64,000 bases of DNA from positions 1 through 64,000 of IMG/VR virus record IMGVR_UViG_3300047548_001236. The stretch is one strand, 5' to 3'. Positions 4,882 to 41,800 of this stretch are shown piece after piece; the stretch's first letter is position 1; each line of letters starts with the position of its first letter. The notes below the pieces were generated by a model. That model was not told the origin of the DNA and searched no databases. It saw nothing but the letters and a program-made list of their open reading frames with translations. A program made the translations under genes and the position numbers.

Positions 4882-5464
4882 AGCTCTCTATATAGATATA
4901 CCCTAACTCCTTGAAATGTTCAACAATTTCCTGCTCGTTCTGCCAAATTGGAATCAACTCGTCGTATTGAGGGTCGGGTGAATGTCTCAAATGAACCTCG
5001 ATCACTTTATCGCCTATAAACTCAACGTTGATACGGGTGATGTTGTGATCGGCTGGTTCTTCGAAAAACAAGCTGGTCAAAGGTGGAAGATCGTGAATCC
5101 TCGTCCATTTCTTGAACTTGTAGAGGTTGTCAGCATCAACAGACGCTTCCCAACCCGAAACAGGAACCCATTTACCTTCCCATTGATAGTCAACAGAAAT
5201 CTGACGTCCTTGAAACTCTTCACACCAAAAATATCCGGGTGGGACAACCGTTGCATCGTCAGCATGAATCCACTTGATACGAGCACCGGCTGACATCCCA
5301 ACAATGTTCATCACTGGTCGGATCACGTAGGCAGCTGATGTTTTTGGAGCTATTCCAGCAGGTCCACAATAGTAGCCGAGCTCCTCAGCTAGCCACAGTT
5401 TGTTGAACCAATGTCTCAAACCAGGATACTTTTGATACGCTTCGATGTCCGTTGTAGCCATCAC
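4811..5464 (-). CDS. Conserved phage protein, possibly ATP-grasp-like
   Basis: WFNKLWLAEELGYYCGPAG; INVEFIGDKVIEVHLR resembles an ATP-grasp C-terminal strand. Confidence 0.55.
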   Translation of the reverse strand: MMATTDIEAYQKYPGLRHWFNKLWLAEELGYYCGPAGIAPKTSAAYVIRPVMNIVGMSAGARIKWIHADDATVVPPGYFWCEEFQGRQISVDYQWEGKWVPVSGWEASVDADNLYKFKKWTRIHDLPPLTSLFFEEPADHNITRINVEFIGDKVIEVHLRHSPDPQYDELIPIWQNEQEIVEHFKELGYIYIESFDDADGFIERPRLGFMAKNNTGE

Positions 5465-11628: not shown

Positions 11629-11962
11629 TTTTCAATTCTTTCTGCCATACAGAGAGTTCCTTGTATGTGCTACAACCACATGGTTTCCAGTTCAAACACT
11701 TTCTACCGAGCCAACCTAACGTGATGCAATGACATTTTTGTTTACTGCAAACTCCGTAATGTTCATTCAGGTAATGCGTTAAGTCTTTGTCTTGCATCTT
11801 GTATCTGCTTTTCCGCAAAATCGAGTAGGTAGTTACTCCTGTCACGACAATCATCTTCAAGGAACAGTTTTAAGTTAACAATAGCAGACTGTATATCGTC
11901 CTCTATCGTCCCCTTCATATTGAGACCAAACAACCCCATCAATATACTCCTAATCTCTAAAA

Positions 11963-12039
11963 TGGCGCCCCCGGCAGGAGTCGAACCCGCAACCCTCGGA
12001 GTCGAAATCCGATACTCTATCCAGTTGAGCTACAGAGGC
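11963..12039 (-). tRNA. tRNA-Arg(UCG)
   Basis: Cloverleaf, loop TTTCGAC, CCA. Confidence 0.92.
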
Positions 12040-12131
12040 TAAATGAGTGGCCTAACAGACGATCTTAATGGGCATTGGCATAAGCCTGGAGGTTCCTGGT
12101 TTGCCACTCGCTACTACGAACCTTTATTCGC

Positions 12132-13274
12132 TCAGATCTCAACCACCCTTAGTGGAGGAAACCCATTGAAAGCAACGCTGCTATATGTAGTAGTGTACGC
12201 TCCAGTGTTATTTATGATCACCTTATCGCCTGTTTTTATCGTTGCAGGCAACAGAATCTTGTGTTTTTCATAAAGCACGTCAGCACTGTCGCATGTTGGA
12301 CCAGCGAGTATGAAACCCTCCACAGGTTCATTTTCCTTACCAATCACGGCGATCTGATACTTAATAGCTTCCTGCTCTGTTTCTGCCAAACCAGAGAATC
12401 TACCAATGTTCAAATACACCCATTTTGTCGAATCGTTGTTTGACTTTTGCGACACTAGGAGAACGTCTGCAGCAATTGCACCGAGGTTTGCAACCATACC
12501 TCGACCAGGTTCAACAATCAGATAGTCGACTCCTTTGAATCTCTTTTTAATCATCGTATTGAGTAATTTATTATACTTCGAAGCTGGTGTAATGTCAACA
12601 CCGTAATAGCTTGGAAAACCACCTCCTATATTCAGCACATGAAAGTCGAATCCCTGCTCACGACATTCTTTCCATATCTCGGAAATGTAGTCCAACGTCG
12701 ATGTCCACATTTGTGGGTGTTTTGTTTGACTGCCGATATGGAAGCTCAATCCAACAGGATTCAGTCCTTTTGATTTAGCACGCTCGGCGAGCGGAATTAC
12801 CATGTCACGATGGCATCCAAACTTACGGCTGAGTGGCCAATCTGCTTCCGTATCGAGAATGATCACACGGATAAACACTCTCGAACCAGGAGCGTGTTCT
12901 GCTACTTTATCAATTTCATCAGACGAATCGACGGCAAAGAGATCAATACCTACACGATGTGCAAACCGTATATCGGAAACGCTCTTAATCGTGTTACCAA
13001 AGCTGATATCGGCAGGCTTTGCTCCTGCATCTAGACACTTTTGAATTTCACCAGCGCTTGCTGCATCAAACTTGCCTCCATACGAGCTGATTGCCTTTAA
13101 AATAGAAGGGTGAGGGTTTGCTTTAACCGCATAATGCACATTGCAGTTGGTAAAGTTTTCAGTGAAACTATCATAGTTCTGTTTAAGCGGTTCGAGATCA
13201 AGAACCAAGGTGGGATAGTCAAACGAGTTGTCTCGTATGAAACGATGTAGTTTACTTTCCATGAAACCCTCCAA
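12132..13274 (-). CDS. Fold-type III PLP-dependent ornithine/lysine decarboxylase
   Basis: HYAVKAN, FDAASAGE, SFHIGSQ, NIGGGF, EPGR, GPTCDSAD, GAYT. Confidence 0.92.
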   Translation of the reverse strand: MEGFMESKLHRFIRDNSFDYPTLVLDLEPLKQNYDSFTENFTNCNVHYAVKANPHPSILKAISSYGGKFDAASAGEIQKCLDAGAKPADISFGNTIKSVSDIRFAHRVGIDLFAVDSSDEIDKVAEHAPGSRVFIRVIILDTEADWPLSRKFGCHRDMVIPLAERAKSKGLNPVGLSFHIGSQTKHPQMWTSTLDYISEIWKECREQGFDFHVLNIGGGFPSYYGVDITPASKYNKLLNTMIKKRFKGVDYLIVEPGRGMVANLGAIAADVLLVSQKSNNDSTKWVYLNIGRFSGLAETEQEAIKYQIAVIGKENEPVEGFILAGPTCDSADVLYEKHKILLPATIKTGDKVIINNTGAYTTTYSSVAFNGFPPLRVVEI

Positions 13275-18569: not shown

Positions 18570-18674
18570 TGGTATCCCAGACAGGATTCGAACCTGCACC
18601 TACGTCGACTGATAACCAGCGGTAGGCCCTAGCTTTTTATGGCCCCGGTGTTTACCCACTTCCACCACTAGGAT
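18570..18674 (-). tRNA. Degenerate Leu-like tRNA with enlarged variable arm
   Basis: Acceptor, D and T arms and CCA intact; anticodon stem poorly paired. Confidence 0.5.
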
Positions 18675-18680
18675 ATTTTT

Positions 18681-18757
18681 TGGAGGTCGACCATGGACTT
18701 GAACCACGACCCCAGCTCTTGCAAGAGCTGTACATTAACCAATTTTGCTAATCGACC
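18681..18757 (-). tRNA. tRNA-Cys-like with 8-nt anticodon loop
   Basis: CAGCT-CTTGCAAG-AGCTG; U73; CCA. Confidence 0.7.
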
Positions 18758-21237: not shown

Positions 21238-21313
21238 TGGCGGCCCTGGTGGGACTCGAACCCACGACCATGAGTTTTAGAGGCTCTAGCTCTACCATCT
21301 GAGCTACAAGGCC
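21238..21313 (-). tRNA. Amber suppressor tRNA (anticodon CUA)
   Basis: Loop CT-CTA-AA, canonical D/T arms, G73, CCA; two mismatches in anticodon stem. Confidence 0.8.
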
Positions 21314-22568: not shown

Positions 22569-23030
22569 CTATTTATTGCAAAGCTCACGAGGCAGCAGGT
22601 CGAATTCAGGAAGATAATCGTTGAAATAACGACGGTAGCTTCCGACGACTGACTTGATCTTACCCTTGACCTTGCGACGCTCTTCAACGTTGCGAATACT
22701 GTTCATCAGGTTGCCGAGCAGATGACGAACCGAAGCAATGTGAGCCTGTTTGTACAGCCTCTCTGCTTCAACCTTGGAGTAACCACGTTCGACAACATAA
22801 TTGACGAAGCAACGATTACCACGTTCTTCATTGCACTTCCGGCACATCACGAACATGTTGTCCGTAGTATCTGGACCACCGTACGACTTTGCTACCATGT
22901 GGTCAACAGTCGCCATGTTGCGTTGCACTTTATCAGGATTTGCTTTCCAGACCAACTGAACGTTGCAGCAAGGGCAACGACGAAGTCCGCTTTCGAAAGC
23001 ATTCTGCAGGGCTGTTTTCTTGAAGCACAT
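22569..23030 (-). CDS. HNH endonuclease
   Basis: CPCC...ATVDHMVAKSYGG...NMFVMCRKCNEERG. Confidence 0.85.
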   Translation of the reverse strand: MCFKKTALQNAFESGLRRCPCCNVQLVWKANPDKVQRNMATVDHMVAKSYGGPDTTDNMFVMCRKCNEERGNRCFVNYVVERGYSKVEAERLYKQAHIASVRHLLGNLMNSIRNVEERRKVKGKIKSVVGSYRRYFNDYLPEFDLLPRELCNK

Positions 23031-23399: not shown

Positions 23400-24355
23400 T
23401 CTACTTGCAACGGGGAGTACGAGGGGATTTGCACCAGGCCCCTGAACCTTCTCCTCTTTTCAGCTCCTCAGGGAAGGAGCCTACTTCTGCACCTTGCTTA
23501 CTCCGCTCTGGAAGTAGAATATTGTTGCGGGTGAGATTACCCCGTATTGTGAGCGCCTTTCCGATGTACCACATCCCTTGCGAGGAGTGTTGTCGGGTTA
23601 TCCACAAGAGTCTTTCGATCATCTTGTATCGCTCAGTGCTGCCGTTTTTGAGGTCTGGCTGTTGACCTGTCGCATGTTACTACTCGTCCGTCTTTCCTAC
23701 GCCTGCCTTGCGAGCAGCTCAGAGGCGCTAACCTCCTACGTGATCATTCTGAACAACTACTCTAGCCTTGCGAGCCTTCGTAGGCCTGATTATCTTTCGA
23801 CTCAGGCATTAAGCACCTTTCGTAACACACCGGAGCAGACTTTCGCTTTTTGAATCTATGTTGCTTTGAACCAAAATCAAACGCTAATTTAATAGCTGCG
23901 AACCTACTGAGAAGTGCTGCTCCAGTTGCTCCACACCTTGTTAGATGCAGAATACCACACTCCTCCTGTCTTTCTCCTTGCGGGATACTCAACGTCACTT
24001 CACGAATCCGGTGTGACCCTTCCTCGTTGATGATCCTACACCGCCCTTCTACGCGAATAGTCGGACTATGTAGACACCTGTTGGACTTTTCCATTCGTTA
24101 GTTTGGCTGAAAACTGTTTGGGCGCCAACCCTCTTACACCTCACCGATCGGCTCTGGTGCTATCCTTTCGGACAGTCTTCCTAACTTACTGGATACCTCC
24201 TAGCTTCTAAGGCTAGAAGGGACTTGCTTTCGGTTTAATCCGAGTCAAGTCTATCCCAGGCTTGTATGAATGGACCATTTTACTGGCGCAGGTATGTAGG
24301 AATCCCTGCTTTGGGTGTGTTACCACACTTACCCTGACGACGTCATACCGCCATT
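23400..24355 (-). ncRNA. Candidate large structured ncRNA (about 950 nt)
   Basis: No credible ORF, many hairpins, downstream of a promoter and boxA within the tRNA island. Confidence 0.45.
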
Positions 24356-24644: not shown

Positions 24645-24768
24645 ACGGGAACATCTGATTTTTGCCGGCTGCTCTACCACTGAGCTACAAGATCCTTGTG
24701 GGGACCTTGGAGGGATTCGAACCCACGACCCGCTGGTTGGTATATCAATATTTGCTGTATTGTTCCCT
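24645..24768 (-). ncRNA. CAGCAA cassette 5: permuted tRNA-like RNA with G-1:C73-type acceptor
   Basis: T arm, CAAGGTCCCCA-CAA-GGATCTTG, then D arm; GGGAACA/TGTTCCC closing stem. Confidence 0.75.
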
Positions 24769-27947: not shown

Positions 27948-28078
27948 GTGTATTCTCCGTATGTTTTGTATATGTGCGTATATTTTTGTATGAACAATGT
28001 GTAGGCACGATGTAGTAATGCGTTCACAACACTATTTATACACGGTTACGCATACGATACAGCACCTACGAAGAAAAA

Positions 28079-28177
28079 TATCCTGGTTGGACTCGAACCA
28101 ACGGCCTGCGCTTTATTCCCAGCGTTTGGGTCCTTCACCATGAGGGAGCACTGCTCTACCGACTGAGCTACAGGATG
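28079..28177 (-). ncRNA. tRNA-like RNA with 34-nt anticodon loop, no CCA
   Basis: Canonical D and T arms; two hairpins in the anticodon loop. Confidence 0.6.
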
Positions 28178-31075: not shown

Positions 31076-31331
31076 AGACACATCTCCTTTTGAATACAAC
31101 TCTAAGCAAGAGCACGTTTGTACTCAGGGCGTGCAGATGCTATGCCTTGATATTTATTTCAGAACAGCCGCAGTCCTCGATGATCATCATACTGCCACAA
31201 CCACATGTTGCACGTTCCCTGGCTCGTCCACGATCCACCGCCAGGTCTCTAAGCTGCTCTAGGATAATCACCTGCCGGCTTCTACCCTAGCCTCACGGTT
31301 TGTTCTAGAATTTATCCACTTTGGCTTATTT

Positions 31332-31425
31332 TGGTGCCCATGACAGGATTCGAACCTGCATGCCCCTTTTACAAGGCGGCGCCATCTCAGGGCGCTGTGG
31401 CTACCAGAAGTTACACCACATGGGC
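31332..31425 (-). tRNA. tRNA-Leu(GAG), second copy
   Basis: Loop CTGAGAT, long variable arm. Confidence 0.82.
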
Positions 31426-31520
31426 AGAATATTGGTCGGTCTCTCCCTGATGTCACACCTTTGCAGAGCGGTCTCTACAACCGTAAAGGATGCTTCGATG
31501 TTTACAGAGCCTTTGGATAA

Positions 31521-31626
31521 TGGTGGTCTCAGCAGGATTCGAACCTGCACCGCGCCGGAAGCACATTCCGGTGTTCACCCGAGGTTTCACTCTGCAGCGC
31601 TACTACCCTCAACGAACTCCGAGACC
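31521..31626 (-). ncRNA. tRNA-like RNA with acceptor, T arm and CCA but aberrant body
   Basis: GGTCTCG/TGAGACC-A-CCA; GCAGGTTCGAATCCTGC. Confidence 0.6.
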
Positions 31627-31631
31627 ATAAT

Positions 31632-31712
31632 TGGTGCTGATGGAGGGACTCGAACCCTCAAAAACTCACTTTCTGAAAATGAGATGTCTACCTGAAATTG
31701 CATCACATCAGC
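31632..31712 (-). tRNA. tRNA-Leu(CAG), short variable region
   Basis: Loop TTCAGAA. Confidence 0.8.
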
Positions 31713-31717
31713 GTTAT

Positions 31718-31793
31718 TGGATGCCCCGCTTGGACTCGAACCAAGGTTTTCGCGCTCAGAACGCGACGTCCTACCGGCATAGACGACGGGGCA
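31718..31793 (-). tRNA. tRNA-Gln(CUG)
   Basis: Loop TTCTGAG; U1-A72. Confidence 0.88.
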
Positions 31794-31797
31794 AAGA

Positions 31798-32523
31798 TTA
31801 TATGGTGCGGCCGAAGTTCCACCCGTCAGGGAGAGTGTCTCCTTTAGCCATTTTCCTATTGTTGTGACCGTCTGTTATCCAAACAGAGTTCTCTGTTTTT
31901 CCACGCACCCAACCTTCTGGTATATCGGAATCGTTAGTTAGACGTTTATTCGTTTTACCGTCGGTTATCCACATAAACGGTTGTCTCTTTCCTTTATTCC
32001 GCTCTTTAGAGCGGTAATTTGAATCTTTCCATTTCTGAGAAATACTTTCTGATATTTTCTGTTTATGTTCTTCGGTTTTTGCCACACCTTTGTGGAGTTT
32101 GCTATTGTGTTCAGCTATACGCTTTTTGTGATCAACCGTCAACTTGCGCCCAACACCGTGCTTATTCCCTTTCATGGCGCGTGAAATAAGTTTTTTTGTT
32201 GATTCGTTATGTGTTCTACCCTCGAACGTCAACCCATTGATCTGTTTACCGCCCAGACCACCCCCAACGCAAATGTTATATGTATCAGAACGCGCGACAA
32301 AATCTTCGTTAACTATTTCTCGTTCTTTTTGAATTGCAGCGTCAAGAGTATCGAAGCGGTACATTACTTCCTTAGAAAAGGTGTCTCTACCATACTTTAC
32401 AATAGCCCTTTTTAATAGTTTTCCGGAACCCATATATCCGTCATCAACATCGTCGGTTTTATGAAGTCCAATGTATATTTTACCATTAGCCAAATTAGTA
32501 ACTTTGTAAATGGTGTAATCCAT
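31798..32523 (-). CDS. Seg-like GIY-YIG homing endonuclease with NUMOD3
   Basis: TIYKVTNLANGKIYIG, YMGSG, HNESTKKLIS. Confidence 0.9.
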   Translation of the reverse strand: MDYTIYKVTNLANGKIYIGLHKTDDVDDGYMGSGKLLKRAIVKYGRDTFSKEVMYRFDTLDAAIQKEREIVNEDFVARSDTYNICVGGGLGGKQINGLTFEGRTHNESTKKLISRAMKGNKHGVGRKLTVDHKKRIAEHNSKLHKGVAKTEEHKQKISESISQKWKDSNYRSKERNKGKRQPFMWITDGKTNKRLTNDSDIPEGWVRGKTENSVWITDGHNNRKMAKGDTLPDGWNFGRTI

Positions 32524-32556
32524 GTGCTAATACCTCCAGCACATATTTATGATTTT

Positions 32557-32584
32557 GGAGATTTTACCATTAAACTACCTCCCA
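32557..32584 (-). pseudogene. 5' remnant of a tRNA (Gln-like)
   Basis: TGGGAGGTAGTTTAATGGTAAAATCTCC, truncated by the HEG promoter. Confidence 0.6.
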
Positions 32585-32779
32585 TCGCTCTTCTTTGAAC
32601 TGCACCGGCTGCATTCGGATCCTTGGCCGAGGCGTTCTGGCATGCAGCAGCGTACCCGTCGATGCAGTCCAAAGAAGAGTCGGTTATTACTGGTTTCCTC
32701 ACCGAAAGGTCTTTAATACACCAGTCCTATTGTCAGTCATTAAAAAGATCGTACGTCAGACTGACAATTGAGTACGATC

Positions 32780-33154
32780 TCATCCCACCGTGTCGATATG
32801 AGTCAACCGAGACGGTTCAATTTTTCCGTGATGAATATATCCATGTCCGTCTGTTCCAGGTGCAAACTTGCTCGACCAATCACTCATATCATCTGTTTCA
32901 TGATCTTTATGAAGTGGTAGGTTACTCGAATCAACTTTCCATATATCCATGGACTTGCCATCATCTGCATGGAGATTAGCAAACCACTTGGCATTATTTA
33001 AGTCTTTCCACACATACACCTTTCCAGATCTAGTGTCAAGACCTTTTTGCTTGATGGTATTATGTCTGTCAGCCAGCGACACGTGGTAGCTTGTATCGAT
33101 ACTGTGAGTCGTTTGCTCGTGTAGCTTGGTAATAAATTGGATGAAACTATCCAT
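32780..33154 (-). CDS. Putative internal protein, ADP-ribosyltransferase-like fold
   Basis: MDSFIQFI..LHE start; YHVS...IKQKGL...VYV. Confidence 0.55.
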   Translation of the reverse strand: MDSFIQFITKLHEQTTHSIDTSYHVSLADRHNTIKQKGLDTRSGKVYVWKDLNNAKWFANLHADDGKSMDIWKVDSSNLPLHKDHETDDMSDWSSKFAPGTDGHGYIHHGKIEPSRLTHIDTVG

Positions 33155-33184
33155 CACTTTCTCCGATTGTTTGATATCGGATAT

Positions 33185-33472
33185 TTATTGTTGTGATTGT
33201 TTCAGAAGAGCTTCTCTACGTCTCGCGACCTTGAGGTTACGGATCAACGTTTTTACTTCTGTTGGAGCTTTGAGATTGCATTCCATGCAAGCAGAGAGCG
33301 CTTTTACTCTAACCTCACGATCGGAAATGGTAGACACAACATCCACATAATGAAAGTAGTCGCTAACGTGTCTCATAACCTTGGATTGTAGTGCCGGATC
33401 ATTGCTTACGATCCTTTGCAGCAACAAAGCAGCTTCCGACTTTCCAAACAGATAATCCATTTCACACTCCAT
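33185..33472 (-). CDS. Hypothetical protein
   Basis: ORF. Confidence 0.5.
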   Translation of the reverse strand: MECEMDYLFGKSEAALLLQRIVSNDPALQSKVMRHVSDYFHYVDVVSTISDREVRVKALSACMECNLKAPTEVKTLIRNLKVARRREALLKQSQQ

Positions 33473-35867: not shown

Positions 35868-35943
35868 TGGTCGGGGTGGCCAGACTCGAACTGACGACTT
35901 TTAGTACCCAAAACTAACGCTCTACCACCTGAGCTACACCCCG
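35868..35943 (-). tRNA. tRNA-Pro(UGG)
   Basis: Loop TTTGGGT. Confidence 0.9.
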
Positions 35944-36323
35944 TAATGTACTTTTCTATGACAGTTGGAACACAAGACTATACACTTCTGTGCTTCCTCG
36001 TAAAAGAGGCGCCGTCCTCTTGCATCGCTCGGATGCAAGTCTTTAACGGTAGGATCGAGATGGTGCAGATCAAGTACCGCAGGGTGATTCTCACCACAGT
36101 GAGCACATCCTCTCGATACCTTATACTCTCTCACCTCATCGGCAAATTTATCTCGTGCCTTTTTACGTATTACGTCATACTTCTGTTTCTTTTTAGCCTC
36201 AGATAAAGCACTAAATGCGTTTGAGCACTTCTTACAATACCGTTGATAGCCATCAGGCGACTTCGCTTGTTTGTAGAAGTTACCCAACGGTTTAGTTTGT
36301 TGGCACTGTAGACACGTTTTCAT
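35934..36323 (-). CDS. HNH endonuclease whose stop codon lies inside tRNA-Pro
   Basis: CAHCGE..LDLHHLDP...KCIVLCSNCHRKVH; TATAAATA upstream. Confidence 0.88.
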   Translation of the reverse strand: MKTCLQCQQTKPLGNFYKQAKSPDGYQRYCKKCSNAFSALSEAKKKQKYDVIRKKARDKFADEVREYKVSRGCAHCGENHPAVLDLHHLDPTVKDLHPSDARGRRLFYEEAQKCIVLCSNCHRKVHYGV

Positions 36324-37409: not shown

Positions 37410-37485
37410 TGGCTGGGGATCCAGGATTCGAACCTGGAACCTGCGGTACCAAAAACCGTTGCTCTGCCAATTGAGCTAATCCCCA
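37410..37485 (-). tRNA. tRNA-Gln(UUG)
   Basis: Loop TTTTGGT; U1-A72. Confidence 0.9.
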
Positions 37486-37486
37486 A

Positions 37487-37924
37487 TCATCTCTTTGGAA
37501 ACTGATCTAGGTTCAGATAGCTGACTTCGACCGTTTCATCTCCTCTTAGCTTTGCGGCCATCACAGCATGATGGCCATCGTCGATGTAGTGCTTTCCTTT
37601 ATGTGTCACAACTCTGATATGAGTCGGTTTTGTCTCACCGATCTTCATTCTCAGCGTTTCGACATTCTCCGTTCTGACGAACGGCTGTGTCGGAAGCAAC
37701 TCTTCAACACGCATGTTTGCCTTTGTAAACATACCTCTATAGACCGAACGCGTCAGTTTTGCTTCTACACGCATTTCACGAACAGCAACGGACTCAACCT
37801 TACGAGAGTCAAATGCTGTCAGCGGAATGTGCATGCCTTTGACAACCTTTTCCCATTTACCAAAACGAGAACGTTTGCCATAACGGCGTGCTACACGAAT
37901 AGCTAGCTGAACGGGGTCTACCAT
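37487..37924 (-). CDS. ParB/Srx-like domain protein
   Basis: LLPTQ...YIDDGHHAVMAA. Confidence 0.7.
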   Translation of the reverse strand: MVDPVQLAIRVARRYGKRSRFGKWEKVVKGMHIPLTAFDSRKVESVAVREMRVEAKLTRSVYRGMFTKANMRVEELLPTQPFVRTENVETLRMKIGETKPTHIRVVTHKGKHYIDDGHHAVMAAKLRGDETVEVSYLNLDQFPKR

Positions 37925-37991
37925 AGCATTCTCCTTTGTTGTCCATATAGACGTGGCACAGTGAAAATGCAACGGTGTAAGAGGCCAATAT

Positions 37992-39068: not shown

Positions 39069-39422
39069 TGGTGGACTGTATCGGATTTGAACCGACATTG
39101 TAAGGTTATCTGACACCAGATGGTCGTTACCGACATGGATTTACACAGGCCCCACGGTTACCGTTGTTTACTAGTCAACAGCCCATTGGTGCCTAAGTCG
39201 TACATGCTAAAGTCAGCAAGACGAACATAGGACTTTATCTTGGTGGATCTGACGGGACTCGAACCCGCGTAACTCTGCCTTGTGTACCCCTAACGAATTA
39301 AGGTGGCAGTGTGATTCCTCACGTACACTAACAGACCCATAATTTGGTGGAACAGGGAAGTCGTGTAGTCGCTCCCAGGCGGCCCATATTGGCCCCGCAG
39401 TTATACACTCTGCGCATGCCCC
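39069..39422 (-). ncRNA. Three tRNA-like RNAs with G3.U70 Ala-type acceptors and aberrant bodies
   Basis: 39069-39184, 39241-39338, 39345-39422; each GGG.../...TCC-A-CCA. Confidence 0.65.
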
Positions 39423-41674: not shown

Positions 41675-41800
41675 TGGCGACCCCGGTAGGACTCGAACCT
41701 ACAACCTACTGATTAGATCGTGCCTTAGAAGATTCGCACTTCACTGGGCTTCCATACCCTCAGGCCAAGTCAGTTGCTCTATCCATTGAGCTACGGAGTC
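41675..41800 (-). tRNA. tRNA-Arg(UCU) interrupted by a 50-nt insert in the anticodon
   Basis: Removing 41717-41766 restores a 76-nt cloverleaf with loop CTTCTAA. Confidence 0.85.

What the first reader, a model, noticed from the sequence alone, without database searches (positions are those of the whole stretch)
31718..32584. GIY-YIG HEG between a 5' tRNA remnant and an intact tRNA-Gln(CUG)
Seen: TGGGAGGTAGTTTAATGGTAAAATCTCC (U1-starting, Gln-like 5' half) stops at the HEG promoter, and a complete tRNA-Gln begins 4 nt after the HEG stop. This is a third case of the remnant-HEG-replacement pattern, with yet another nuclease type.
Basis: partly seen in the sequence, partly recalled or inferred. 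Interest (0 to 1): 0.65.

Follow-up and report, generated by a model that had tools for sequence, protein, structure and literature searches.

The report
Homing endonuclease inside a tRNA-Gln gene
A selfish SegB-type nuclease gene sits inside one of a giant T4-like phage's glutamine-tRNA genes, leaving only its first 24-28 bases. The intact tRNA-Gln beside it is the old neighbour, not a spare brought along, although some relatives of this nuclease do bring such a spare.

Summary
On the minus strand lie a 28-nt tRNA 5' piece (32584-32557), a 241-aa SegB-like GIY-YIG/NUMOD3 ORF (32523-31798) and an intact tRNA-Gln(CUG) 4 nt after its stop.

Related phages settle the origin. Relatives without the nuclease gene (L139/L174, L145, a contig in run X9) carry an intact tRNA-Gln(UUG) exactly where the piece lies, 5 nt upstream of the same tRNA-Gln(CUG). 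A relative with the nuclease gene (L178, protein 61% identical) has the same 5' piece and also the matching 3' end of that tRNA after the stop codon. So the gene sits inside tRNA-Gln(UUG). The window has additionally lost the 3' end.

tRNA-Gln(CUG) is therefore the resident neighbour, not a replacement. A second tRNA-Gln(UUG) at 37410-37485, also present in relatives without the nuclease gene, covers the loss.

In L179 the resident Gln(UUG) is split and the insert carries a divergent intact Gln(UUG). The syntenic relative L186, which lacks the insert, has a single gene there. Several Gly(UCC) loci look the same.

SegB and its link to tRNA genes are published. Insertion within a tRNA gene is a new variant of that kind. 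Interest is moderate.

The parts
32557..32584 (-). Orphaned 5' end of a tRNA-Gln(UUG) gene: acceptor 5' strand plus D-arm. The first 24 nt are tRNA-derived. The last 4 nt (CTCC) belong to a 12-nt stretch absent from the relative L178.
   Evidence: Unique in the window. Aligns with positions 1-25 of the intact tRNA-Gln(UUG) at L139:3568-3643, at the same place after a flank 55/60 identical. The first 22 nt are identical to the remnant at L178:1450-1471.
32585..32644 (-). Conserved upstream flank, the left homology arm shared by alleles with and without the nuclease gene.
   Evidence: 55/60 identical to L139 and 49/60 to L178. Alignments A3 and A7.
32544..32551 (-). Late-promoter-like box CATAAATA (7/8 of T4 TATAAATA). 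Inferred start region of the nuclease gene's own transcript.
   Evidence: Sequence. L178 has an exact TATAAATA at the same place. TATAAATA is found 46 times in the genome against about 17 expected. The phage has T4-type UvsX, topoisomerase II and RNA ligase genes.
32521..32543 (-). Translation start region: a local hairpin (7-bp stem as I read it from the sequence) with GGAGG (32537-32533) in the loop and the ATG (32523-32521) at the 3' end of the stem.
   Evidence: Fold of -9.2 kcal/mol, z -1.9, whose drawn stem lies one base to the 3' side and pairs two of the GGAGG bases. L178 has the same kind of hairpin; I read a compensating change in its stem (GTGCT/AGCAC against GTGCA/TGCAT) off the printed sequences, and no tool counted it.
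31798..32523 (-). Free-standing homing endonuclease gene, 241 aa, SegB-like. GIY-YIG domain at the N-terminus, NUMOD3, and two WITDG...GW..GR repeats at the C-terminus.
   Evidence: ORF. NUMOD3 21 bits against a cut-off of 20.4; GIY-YIG and SegE_GIY-YIG hits below cut-off. PHROG 314 'homing endonuclease', E 1e-38. 37% identity, E 1e-27 to the annotated segB of phage RB32. Absent from syntenic relatives.
31794..31797 (-). 4-nt spacer TCTT, the right junction. It corresponds to the last bases of the 5-nt spacer between the two Gln tRNAs in the allele without the nuclease gene.
   Evidence: Alignment A3. Joint 31799/32560 in run X9.
31718..31793 (-). Intact tRNA-Gln(CUG): the resident neighbour of the broken gene, not cargo of the nuclease gene.
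   Evidence: ARAGORN and Rfam 50.9 bits. Present at the same place in relatives without the nuclease gene: L139:3649-3724 and the X9 contig with 2 differences.
37410..37485 (-). Second, intact tRNA-Gln(UUG) gene that makes the broken copy dispensable.
   Evidence: ARAGORN. An equivalent second copy exists in the relative L174, which lacks the nuclease gene here (5270-5345). Its sequence differs from the disrupted type in the D-arm, anticodon stem and T-arm.

Best explanation
A free-standing SegB-family GIY-YIG homing endonuclease gene, with its own late-type promoter and ribosome-binding site, is inserted inside the first gene of a tandem pair tRNA-Gln(UUG)-tRNA-Gln(CUG). The host is a 283-kb T4-like phage from fresh water.

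The 28-nt piece is what remains of the 5' end of tRNA-Gln(UUG). Its anticodon arm, variable loop and T-arm were replaced by the roughly 760-nt cassette. In this phage the short 3' end was lost as well.

tRNA-Gln(CUG) is the untouched resident neighbour. A second tRNA-Gln(UUG) gene 5 kb away, which predates the insertion, keeps the phage supplied.

Shown: the anatomy, the alleles with and without the nuclease gene, and the family of the protein.

Inferred: the nuclease cuts the intact tRNA-Gln(UUG) gene of phages that lack it during co-infection, as T4 SegB cuts tRNA genes. Repair then copies the cassette from the genome that has it, using the upstream flank plus remnant on one side and tRNA-Gln(CUG) on the other. 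The allele with the cassette is immune because the insertion removed the T-arm region that SegB-type enzymes recognise. The start region is folded into a hairpin, which would keep translation low on read-through transcripts of the tRNA operon.
For: - Relatives without the nuclease gene: L139/L174 and L145/L146 carry an intact tRNA-Gln(UUG) starting at the very base where the remnant starts, after a flank 55/60 identical. In L139 tRNA-Gln(CUG) follows 5 nt later.
- Independent sample: a contig in run X9 joins 32560 to 31799 with 50 other letters. That gives 25+50+1 = 76 nt, the length of a whole tRNA.
- Relative with the nuclease gene, L178: same flank and the same 22-nt remnant, then an exact TATAAATA, a nuclease 61% identical, a 17-nt 3' remnant whose acceptor strand CCTCCCA pairs with TGGGAGG, and then tRNA-Gln(CUG).
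- Protein family. The window's protein lies in a well-supported clade of 13 (SH-aLRT 99).
- Link to tRNA arrays: 71 of the 80 best relatives lie in tRNA arrays on the same strand as the tRNAs.
- SegB precedent: it recognises GGTTCRANTCC in the T-arm and cuts after CCAR at the tRNA 3' end (PMC2330249). The L139 target reads GGTTCGAGCCC ... CCAA, followed by the spacer in which the right junction lies.
- Redundancy: a second Gln(UUG) copy is present in both the window and L174.
- Hairpin over the start region.
Against: - No cleavage, homing or expression data exist.
- The only run that holds the locus whole may be the source sample, and it shows no allele without the nuclease gene.
- The two nucleases at this site are only 61% identical while the flanks are 82-92% identical. 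The insertion is therefore old, or the gene has been replaced. It may no longer be active.
- T4 SegB cuts at the 3' end of tRNA genes, whereas the left junction here is at position 24-25. The cut site cannot be read from the junctions.
- The Pfam GIY-YIG hits are below their curated cut-offs, and no solved structure matched by sequence.
Confidence: 0.8

Rival explanations
1. The nuclease gene arrived as a cassette carrying its own tRNA-Gln, which replaces the tRNA it destroyed.
For: Relatives in the same clade are built this way.
- L179/L180: 5' remnant of Gln(UUG), nuclease gene, a divergent intact Gln(UUG), 17 nt, then the 3' remnant. The syntenic relative L186 lacks the insert and has a single Gln(UUG).
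- L047: the remnant's 34 nt are identical to the start of intact tRNA-Gly(UCC) genes in 25 other contigs. The syntenic relative L177 has one Gly gene there.
- Also L003, L086 and L095.
Against: - In the window the downstream tRNA has another anticodon (CUG against UUG).
- It is present almost unchanged in relatives without the nuclease gene, beside an intact Gln(UUG).
- In L178 the 3' remnant lies upstream of it, so it is outside the insertion.
Confidence: 0.04
2. The window's gene descends from a nuclease-plus-tRNA cassette of the L179 type that later lost its cargo tRNA-Gln(UUG) by deletion. Today's structure would then be a decayed cassette rather than a simple insertion.
For: - The nearest short-form relatives (55-58% identical) all carry a Gln(UUG) cargo and sit in Gln(UUG) genes.
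- Deletions are frequent in this region. The window lacks the 3' remnant that L178 keeps. In L174 only about the first 110 nt of an HNH gene remain, abutting a tRNA. L006 is an internally deleted copy of the L004 gene.
Against: - In L178 the 3' remnant directly follows the stop codon, and its acceptor strand matches the 5' remnant 7/7. This fits the resident gene's own end.
- The left junctions differ: position 24-25 here against position 33-34 in L179 and L181.
- The 241-aa form has an extra C-terminal region that the short forms lack.
Confidence: 0.12
3. The nuclease gene first inserted in the SegB manner in the spacer downstream of an intact tRNA-Gln(UUG). An unrelated later deletion then truncated the tRNA.
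For: In the larger clade of 57, which includes T4-like SegB, 48 have an intact tRNA within 95 nt upstream of the start; the nearest one mostly lies 42-76 nt away. The window's leader is short, at 33 nt.
Against: - L178 has tRNA-derived sequence on both sides of the nuclease gene. A downstream insertion followed by a deletion cannot produce that.
- In the window's clade only 4 of 13 have an intact upstream tRNA. Several show 5' remnants cut in the anticodon arm.
Confidence: 0.03
4. The 28-mer is not tRNA-derived. It would be a regulatory hairpin arm or a mini-ORF start that resembles a D-arm by chance. Alternatively it is the 5' exon of a tRNA gene split by an intron that encodes the nuclease.
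For: - The piece contains GGAGGT followed by ATG and a 7-codon frame.
- In a read-through RNA it pairs with the nuclease gene's ribosome-binding site and AUG (-21.9 kcal/mol, z -2.7).
- Its truncated-tRNA score is weak.
Against: - It is orthologous to an intact tRNA, and 28 of 30 database matches are tRNA 5' ends.
- The pairing is not kept in L178.
- There is no room for a ribozyme: 33 nt before the ORF and 4 nt after it.
- No matching 3' half (CCTCCCA) lies downstream in the window.
- Rfam finds no intron or other family there.
Confidence: 0.01

Closest known systems
T4 SegB, a free-standing GIY-YIG homing endonuclease in the T4 tRNA gene cluster (Brok-Volchanskaya et al. 2008, PMC2330249; survey of SegB-tRNA co-location, PMC13096335, 2026)
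   Same: - Same protein family: 37% identity, with GIY-YIG and NUMOD3.
- Located in a phage tRNA array and absent from close relatives.
- A tRNA starts right after the stop codon.
- The start region is folded into a hairpin.
- SegB recognises tRNA T-arm DNA.
   Different: - T4 segB and the 57-member clade around it lie between intact tRNA genes, just downstream of one.
- The window's gene and its clade of 13 lie inside a tRNA gene and leave a 5' stump.
- Its cut site is unknown.
Translational occlusion of T4 homing endonuclease genes (I-TevI, I-TevII, I-TevIII; proposed for segB), as summarised in PMC2330249
   Same: A late-type promoter box lies just upstream of a hairpin that buries the ribosome-binding site and AUG.
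   Different: Not tested here. The extra pairing of the tRNA stump with the start region is seen in the window (z -2.7) and in L003 (z -6.0), but not in L178, L086 or L095.
Integrative elements that insert into tRNA genes and carry a copy of the displaced part, so the gene stays whole (recalled from general knowledge, not tested here)
   Same: The relatives L179, L047 and L003 insert into a tRNA gene and supply a working copy, leaving a stump as a scar.
   Different: - Those elements use integrases and restore the 3' end by a short repeat.
- Here a nuclease-driven cassette carries a whole, divergent tRNA.
- The window's own copy restores nothing.
Phage Aeh1 mobE splitting nrdA, a homing endonuclease gene inserted within a host gene (cited in PMC2330249 and PMC2988022; recalled)
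   Same: A free-standing homing endonuclease gene sits inside a functional gene rather than between genes.
   Different: There the two gene pieces still make a working enzyme. Here the tRNA gene is destroyed and a paralogue covers for it.

Membership tests
SegB-like free-standing GIY-YIG homing endonuclease | N-terminal GIY-YIG catalytic module | tested here: met
   The Pfam GIY-YIG and SegE_GIY-YIG hits are only sub-threshold (E 0.022 and 0.013). However, PHROG 314 scores E 1e-38, and tblastn gives E 1e-27 to annotated segB. Y6, Y17-I18-G19, E67 and N83 are invariant in alignments with SegB homologues. The module is met at sequence level; catalysis was not tested.
SegB-like free-standing GIY-YIG homing endonuclease | NUMOD3 DNA-binding motif behind the catalytic domain | tested here: met
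   PF07460 scores 21.0 bits against a cut-off of 20.4, residues 102-137.
SegB-like free-standing GIY-YIG homing endonuclease | Present or absent between otherwise homologous genomes | tested here: met
   Absent at this site in L139/L174, L145/L146 and the X9 contig. Present in the window and in L178.
SegB-like free-standing GIY-YIG homing endonuclease | Free-standing: own expression signals, no intron ribozyme | tested here: met
   There are 33 nt between the stump and the ATG, holding a promoter-like box and GGAGG, and 4 nt after the stop. No Rfam intron hit.
SegB-like free-standing GIY-YIG homing endonuclease | Cuts the allele that lacks it at a specific site and is copied into it | not testable with these tools
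   Needs purified protein and DNA of the L139-type allele, or co-infection.
SegB proper (T4-type insertion logic) | Gene lies in the spacer just downstream of an intact tRNA gene | tested here: not met
   The upstream tRNA is truncated at position 24-25. The window's protein falls in a separate clade (SH-aLRT 99) in which 4 of 13 have an intact upstream tRNA, against 48 of 57 in the SegB clade. The rows are related, so the Fisher p of 3e-4 is descriptive only.
   The remnant is orthologous to Gln(UUG) and the downstream gene is Gln(CUG).
   tRNA-Gln(CUG) is present in L139 and in the X9 contig. The feature is met in the relatives L179 against L186 and L047 against L177.
tRNA pseudogene (5' fragment) | Aligns with part of an intact tRNA at the orthologous place and lacks the rest of the cloverleaf | tested here: met
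   21 of the first 24 nt are identical, with one 1-nt gap, to L139:3568-3592. Anticodon arm and T-arm are missing.
Intron-encoded endonuclease in a tRNA gene (group I intron) | Ribozyme core and a 3' exon that completes the tRNA | tested here: not met
   There is no space for a ribozyme, no Rfam hit and no 3' half in the window. The last 72 nt of the ORF are no more like the tRNA's 3' part than other stretches of the ORF (p 0.08).

The most novel reading that the evidence does not exclude
The window's nuclease belongs to a distinct branch of the SegB family that homes into tRNA genes rather than beside them. The breakpoints lie in the D-arm and anticodon-arm region.

This branch stays harmless to its phage in one of two ways. 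Either it carries a complete, sequence-divergent and presumably cleavage-resistant copy of the same tRNA (L179, L181, L047, L003). Or, as here, it strikes a gene that has a paralogue.

The orphaned 5' stump would then serve as the left homology arm for homing. In some loci it would also act as an antisense arm that silences the nuclease gene on operon read-through transcripts.
Probability: 0.35. Interest if true: 0.6.

Novelty: new variant of a known kind. Interest (0 to 1): 0.45.

Why it matters
SegB is the textbook example of a homing endonuclease that lives among phage tRNA genes, and its link to tRNA arrays was surveyed in 2026. This locus and its relatives show a second way of life for the same family: insertion inside a tRNA gene.

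Alleles with and without the nuclease gene are at hand at three tRNA loci (Gln here, Gln(UUG) in L179/L186, Gly in L047/L177; only the window's own site has more than one syntenic relative). In some relatives the insert also carries a whole replacement tRNA.

That gives three things:
- a natural set of target, immune and replacement tRNA sequences from which the recognition rules of these nucleases could be read;
- an explanation for stray tRNA stumps in jumbo-phage tRNA arrays;
- a route by which tRNA genes are swapped between phages.

For this window alone the result is mainly a correction. The tRNA-Gln(CUG) is not cargo.

Tried and rejected
- **Paralogue within the genome.** None of the 51 tRNAs resembles the stump.
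- **Exact matches elsewhere.** The 25-mer has none in viral or metagenome contigs. Close DNA relatives are absent from GenBank phages.
- **Sequence-only HMM of 5' halves.** It does not even list the stump. A loose D-arm pattern is at chance level: 42 non-tRNA hits against about 55 in shuffles.
- **Naming the stump from its own sequence.** This is ambiguous. Matches are Gln 8, Trp 6, Met 5, UCA-type 4 and others 5. The one exact 24-mer match is a tRNA-Trp (L129). I considered a Trp origin with a 6-nt deletion, because CTCCAAAA follows the D-arm. I dropped it once the orthologous Gln(UUG) and L178 were found.
- **A hidden 3' remnant inside the end of the ORF.** Not significant.
- **The stump as a conserved translational silencer.** The pairing holds in the window and L003 only, not in L178, L086 or L095.
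- **The neighbour gene 32780-33157 as a probe in viral contigs.** No hit. The large protein collection then worked.
- **An allele lacking the insert for L003 and L179 by exact pattern.** None found. L186 was found through a neighbouring protein instead.
- **Solved structures by sequence.** No meaningful match.
- **Other remnants beside the HNH genes.** None seen at 22569-23030 or 35934-36323.

Full report
**What is there.** The window is the first 64 kb of a 282,855-bp virus record from a freshwater metagenome. The phage has T4-type UvsX, topoisomerase II subunits and RNA ligase. It carries 51 tRNA genes, all on the minus strand, 38 of them in the window.

Read on the minus strand, the finding consists of:
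- a 28-nt piece at 32584-32557, unique in the window;
- a 33-nt leader with CATAAATA (32551-32544) and GGAGG (32537-32533);
- an ORF of 241 aa at 32523-31798;
- 4 nt (TCTT);
- tRNA-Gln(CUG) at 31793-31718 (ARAGORN; Rfam 50.9 bits).

**Is the piece a tRNA fragment?** Alone it scores only 10.8 bits as a 3'-truncated tRNA, and it has no paralogue among the genome's tRNAs. Three other lines show it is tRNA-derived.
- A strict D-arm pattern is expected 0.34 times per genome.
- Of 30 metagenome matches to a degenerate 24-mer of the piece, 28 are the exact 5' ends of called tRNAs. The other two are one coding-sequence hit seen in two contigs.
- Those tRNAs are of several kinds (Gln 8, Trp 6, Met 5 and others), and the only exact 24-mer match is a tRNA-Trp. 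So U1 and the D-arm do not name the tRNA.

**The protein.** Pfam gives NUMOD3 just above its cut-off and GIY-YIG hits below theirs. PHROG 314 'homing endonuclease' scores E 1e-38. tblastn finds annotated segB genes of T4-like phages at 37% identity, E 1e-27. In RB32, segB lies between tRNA-Ile and tRNA-Arg.

T4 SegB recognises the T-arm motif GGTTCRANTCC and cuts at the 3' end of tRNA genes after CCAR. Its stop codon abuts tRNA-Arg, and a hairpin over its start region was proposed to restrain translation (PMC2330249). A 2026 paper already reports that SegB homologues co-locate with tRNA genes across phages (PMC13096335).

**Relatives of the protein.** Of the 80 best relatives in viral contigs, 71 lie in tRNA arrays on the tRNAs' strand. 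A quick maximum-likelihood tree of 70 proteins separates two groups.
- A clade of 57, which includes T4-like SegB. In 48 of them an intact tRNA ends within 95 nt upstream of the start (mostly 42-76 nt).
- A clade of 13 (SH-aLRT 99), which holds the window's protein. Only 4 have such a tRNA, while in 12 a tRNA begins at or within the stop codon. The rows are related, so these counts are descriptive.

In the clade of 13, 5' stumps of tRNAs precede the promoter box: L003:2926-2959, L047:1437-1470 and L086:1434-1467 (all Gly-like), and L095:1443-1473 (Met-like).

**The decisive comparison.** Laying public contigs on 31300-33200 showed a contig in run X9, a wastewater sample, from a related phage. 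It is about 89% identical over 32560-33190. It joins 32560 to 31799 with 50 other letters in place of 760, and it carries tRNA-Gln(CUG) with 2 differences.

Through the neighbouring 124-aa protein I fetched syntenic relatives. In L139/L174 (a 297-kb scaffold) an intact tRNA-Gln(UUG), L139:3568-3643, starts at the base where the stump starts, after a flank 55/60 identical. tRNA-Gln(CUG), L139:3649-3724, follows 5 nt later. L145/L146 also have a tRNA-Gln(UUG) there. The stump shares 21 of its first 24 nt with the L139 gene. It is therefore a Gln(UUG) stump, and tRNA-Gln(CUG) is the resident neighbour.

**A second allele with the nuclease gene.** The closest homologue of the protein (P0014, 61% identical, 244 aa) lies on L178, which shares the flank (49/60). 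Its order is:
- stump (1450-1471, identical to the window's first 22 nt);
- an exact TATAAATA;
- the nuclease gene;
- directly after the stop, 17 nt (2236-2252) that are the T-stem 3' strand, acceptor 3' strand and CCA of a tRNA whose acceptor pairs 7/7 with the stump;
- 7 nt, then tRNA-Gln(CUG).

So the gene lies inside tRNA-Gln(UUG), replacing roughly positions 24-59. The window has lost the 3' end as well. I found no trace of it in the end of the ORF and no CCTCCCA nearby.

A second tRNA-Gln(UUG) at 37410-37485 has a counterpart in L174, which lacks the nuclease gene at this site (5270-5345). The redundancy therefore predates the insertion. The surviving copy differs from the disrupted type in the D-arm, anticodon stem and T-arm. 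That would fit resistance to the nuclease but does not show it.

Short-form relatives (P0015-P0020, 55-58% identical) sit in Gln(UUG) genes with cargo. L179/L180 read:
- tRNA-Leu(UAG), then 7 nt;
- 5' stump, positions 1-33 (1440-1472), ending in the anticodon loop;
- TATAAATA and the nuclease gene;
- an intact but divergent tRNA-Gln(UUG) that overlaps the stop;
- 17 nt, then the 3' stump TCTCCCAGCCA.

The syntenic relative L186, which lacks the insert, has one tRNA-Gln(UUG) between Leu(UAG) and Pro(UGG). L181 has the same left junction with a different stump.

For Gly, the 34-nt stump of L047 is identical to the start of intact tRNA-Gly(UCC) genes in 25 other contigs. The syntenic L177 has a single Gly gene between Asn and Lys, where L047 has a stump, the nuclease gene and a divergent Gly(UCC). 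Disrupt-and-replace cassettes therefore exist in this clade. The window's copy is not one, or is no longer one.

**How it most likely works.** Shown:
- an insertion inside a tRNA gene;
- presence and absence among close relatives;
- SegB-family membership;
- a late-promoter-like box, in a genome where TATAAATA occurs 46 times against about 17 expected;
- a local hairpin at the start, with GGAGG in the loop as I read it (the drawn fold pairs two of its bases) and the AUG at the 3' end of the stem. The hairpin recurs in L178; I read a compensating stem change off the printed sequences, which no tool counted.

Inferred: the nuclease cuts the intact Gln(UUG) gene of phages that lack it. The L139 target has a near-consensus SegB site, GGTTCGAGCCC ... 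CCAA, that ends at the spacer where the right junction lies. Repair copies the cassette. The allele carrying it is immune because the T-arm is gone.

The stump also pairs with the ribosome-binding site and AUG in a read-through RNA (z -2.7 here; z -6.0 in L003). This pairing is absent in L178, L086 and L095, so I treat it as a local possibility only.

**Novelty.** SegB, its cleavage of tRNA genes and its co-location with tRNAs are known. I found no paper on tRNA stumps beside homing endonuclease genes or on cargo tRNAs, but the library is not exhaustive. I rate the locus a new variant of a known kind, of moderate interest. The family-level cassette design is the part worth following.

Noticed in passing
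window 23528-23965 (-): GOLLD RNA, 194.9 bits against a gathering score of 150, inside the tRNA array.
   Followed up: no
window 41678-41800, 28078-28177, 18573-18674, 31635-31712 (all -): tRNAs found by Rfam but missed by ARAGORN. Three are 100-123 nt long with insertions (58.5, 47.2 and 32.6 bits). The fourth has anticodon CAG but a short variable arm (39.8 bits). Their canonical 5' halves could be mistaken for remnants.
   Followed up: partly
window 31431-31629 (-): A 199-nt stretch absent from relatives (joint 31430/31630 in runs X9 and X2; also absent in L139). It holds a tRNA-like sequence at 31521-31625 with an 8-bp acceptor stem, a long extra arm and a CCA end. No tool calls it a tRNA, and its fold is no better than shuffles (z -0.4).
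   Followed up: partly
window 35934-36323 (-) with tRNA-Pro(UGG) 35868-35943; L174:6111-6299: An HNH endonuclease gene (PHROG 2255, E 3.5e-33) with an exact TATAAATA upstream. Its stop codon lies 10 nt inside a second tRNA-Pro(UGG). In L174 only about the first 110 nt of this gene remain, abutting tRNA-Gly(UCC), and the tRNA-Pro is missing. This may be an HNH-plus-tRNA cassette and its decay.
   Followed up: partly
L029-L033 (for example L029:1400-2170): A SegB-like gene lies between what looks like a tmRNA 5' end (GGGGATGACCAGGTTTCGAC...) and a T-arm with acceptor 3' end. This suggests insertion into a phage tmRNA-like gene.
   Followed up: no
L179:1440-2107, L181:1441-2071, L186:2325-2400: Nuclease gene plus tRNA-Gln(UUG) cassettes inserted in the anticodon loop of a resident tRNA-Gln(UUG). 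In L179 both stumps are kept, and the relative L186, which lacks the insert, has a single intact gene.
   Followed up: yes
L174:8047-8766; L175:381-1007 and 11687-12325: Close relatives of this phage carry other SegB-like genes (36-41% identical) at other tRNA spacers, for example between tRNA-Pro(UGG) and tRNA-Pro(GGG). In the window those two tRNAs are adjacent.
   Followed up: partly
window 37487-37972 (-): A 161-aa ORF with a weak ParB-like nuclease hit ends 1 nt before the intact tRNA-Gln(UUG). Across the array many ORFs stop within a few nt of a tRNA.
   Followed up: no
window 21238-21313, 18681-18757, 24668-24733, 39241-39338 (all -): An amber-suppressor-type tRNA (anticodon CTA), a tRNA with an 8-nt anticodon loop, a Y-RNA-like (YrlA) hit of 35.8 bits, and a tmRNA-like piece of 31.5 bits. 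The last two are below their gathering scores. No other genetic code was assumed.
   Followed up: no
L006:3001-3230 against L004:3001-3609: An internally deleted copy of a SegB-like gene between tRNA-Pro(UGG) and tRNA-Pro(CGG). This is an example of decay of such a gene in place.
   Followed up: no
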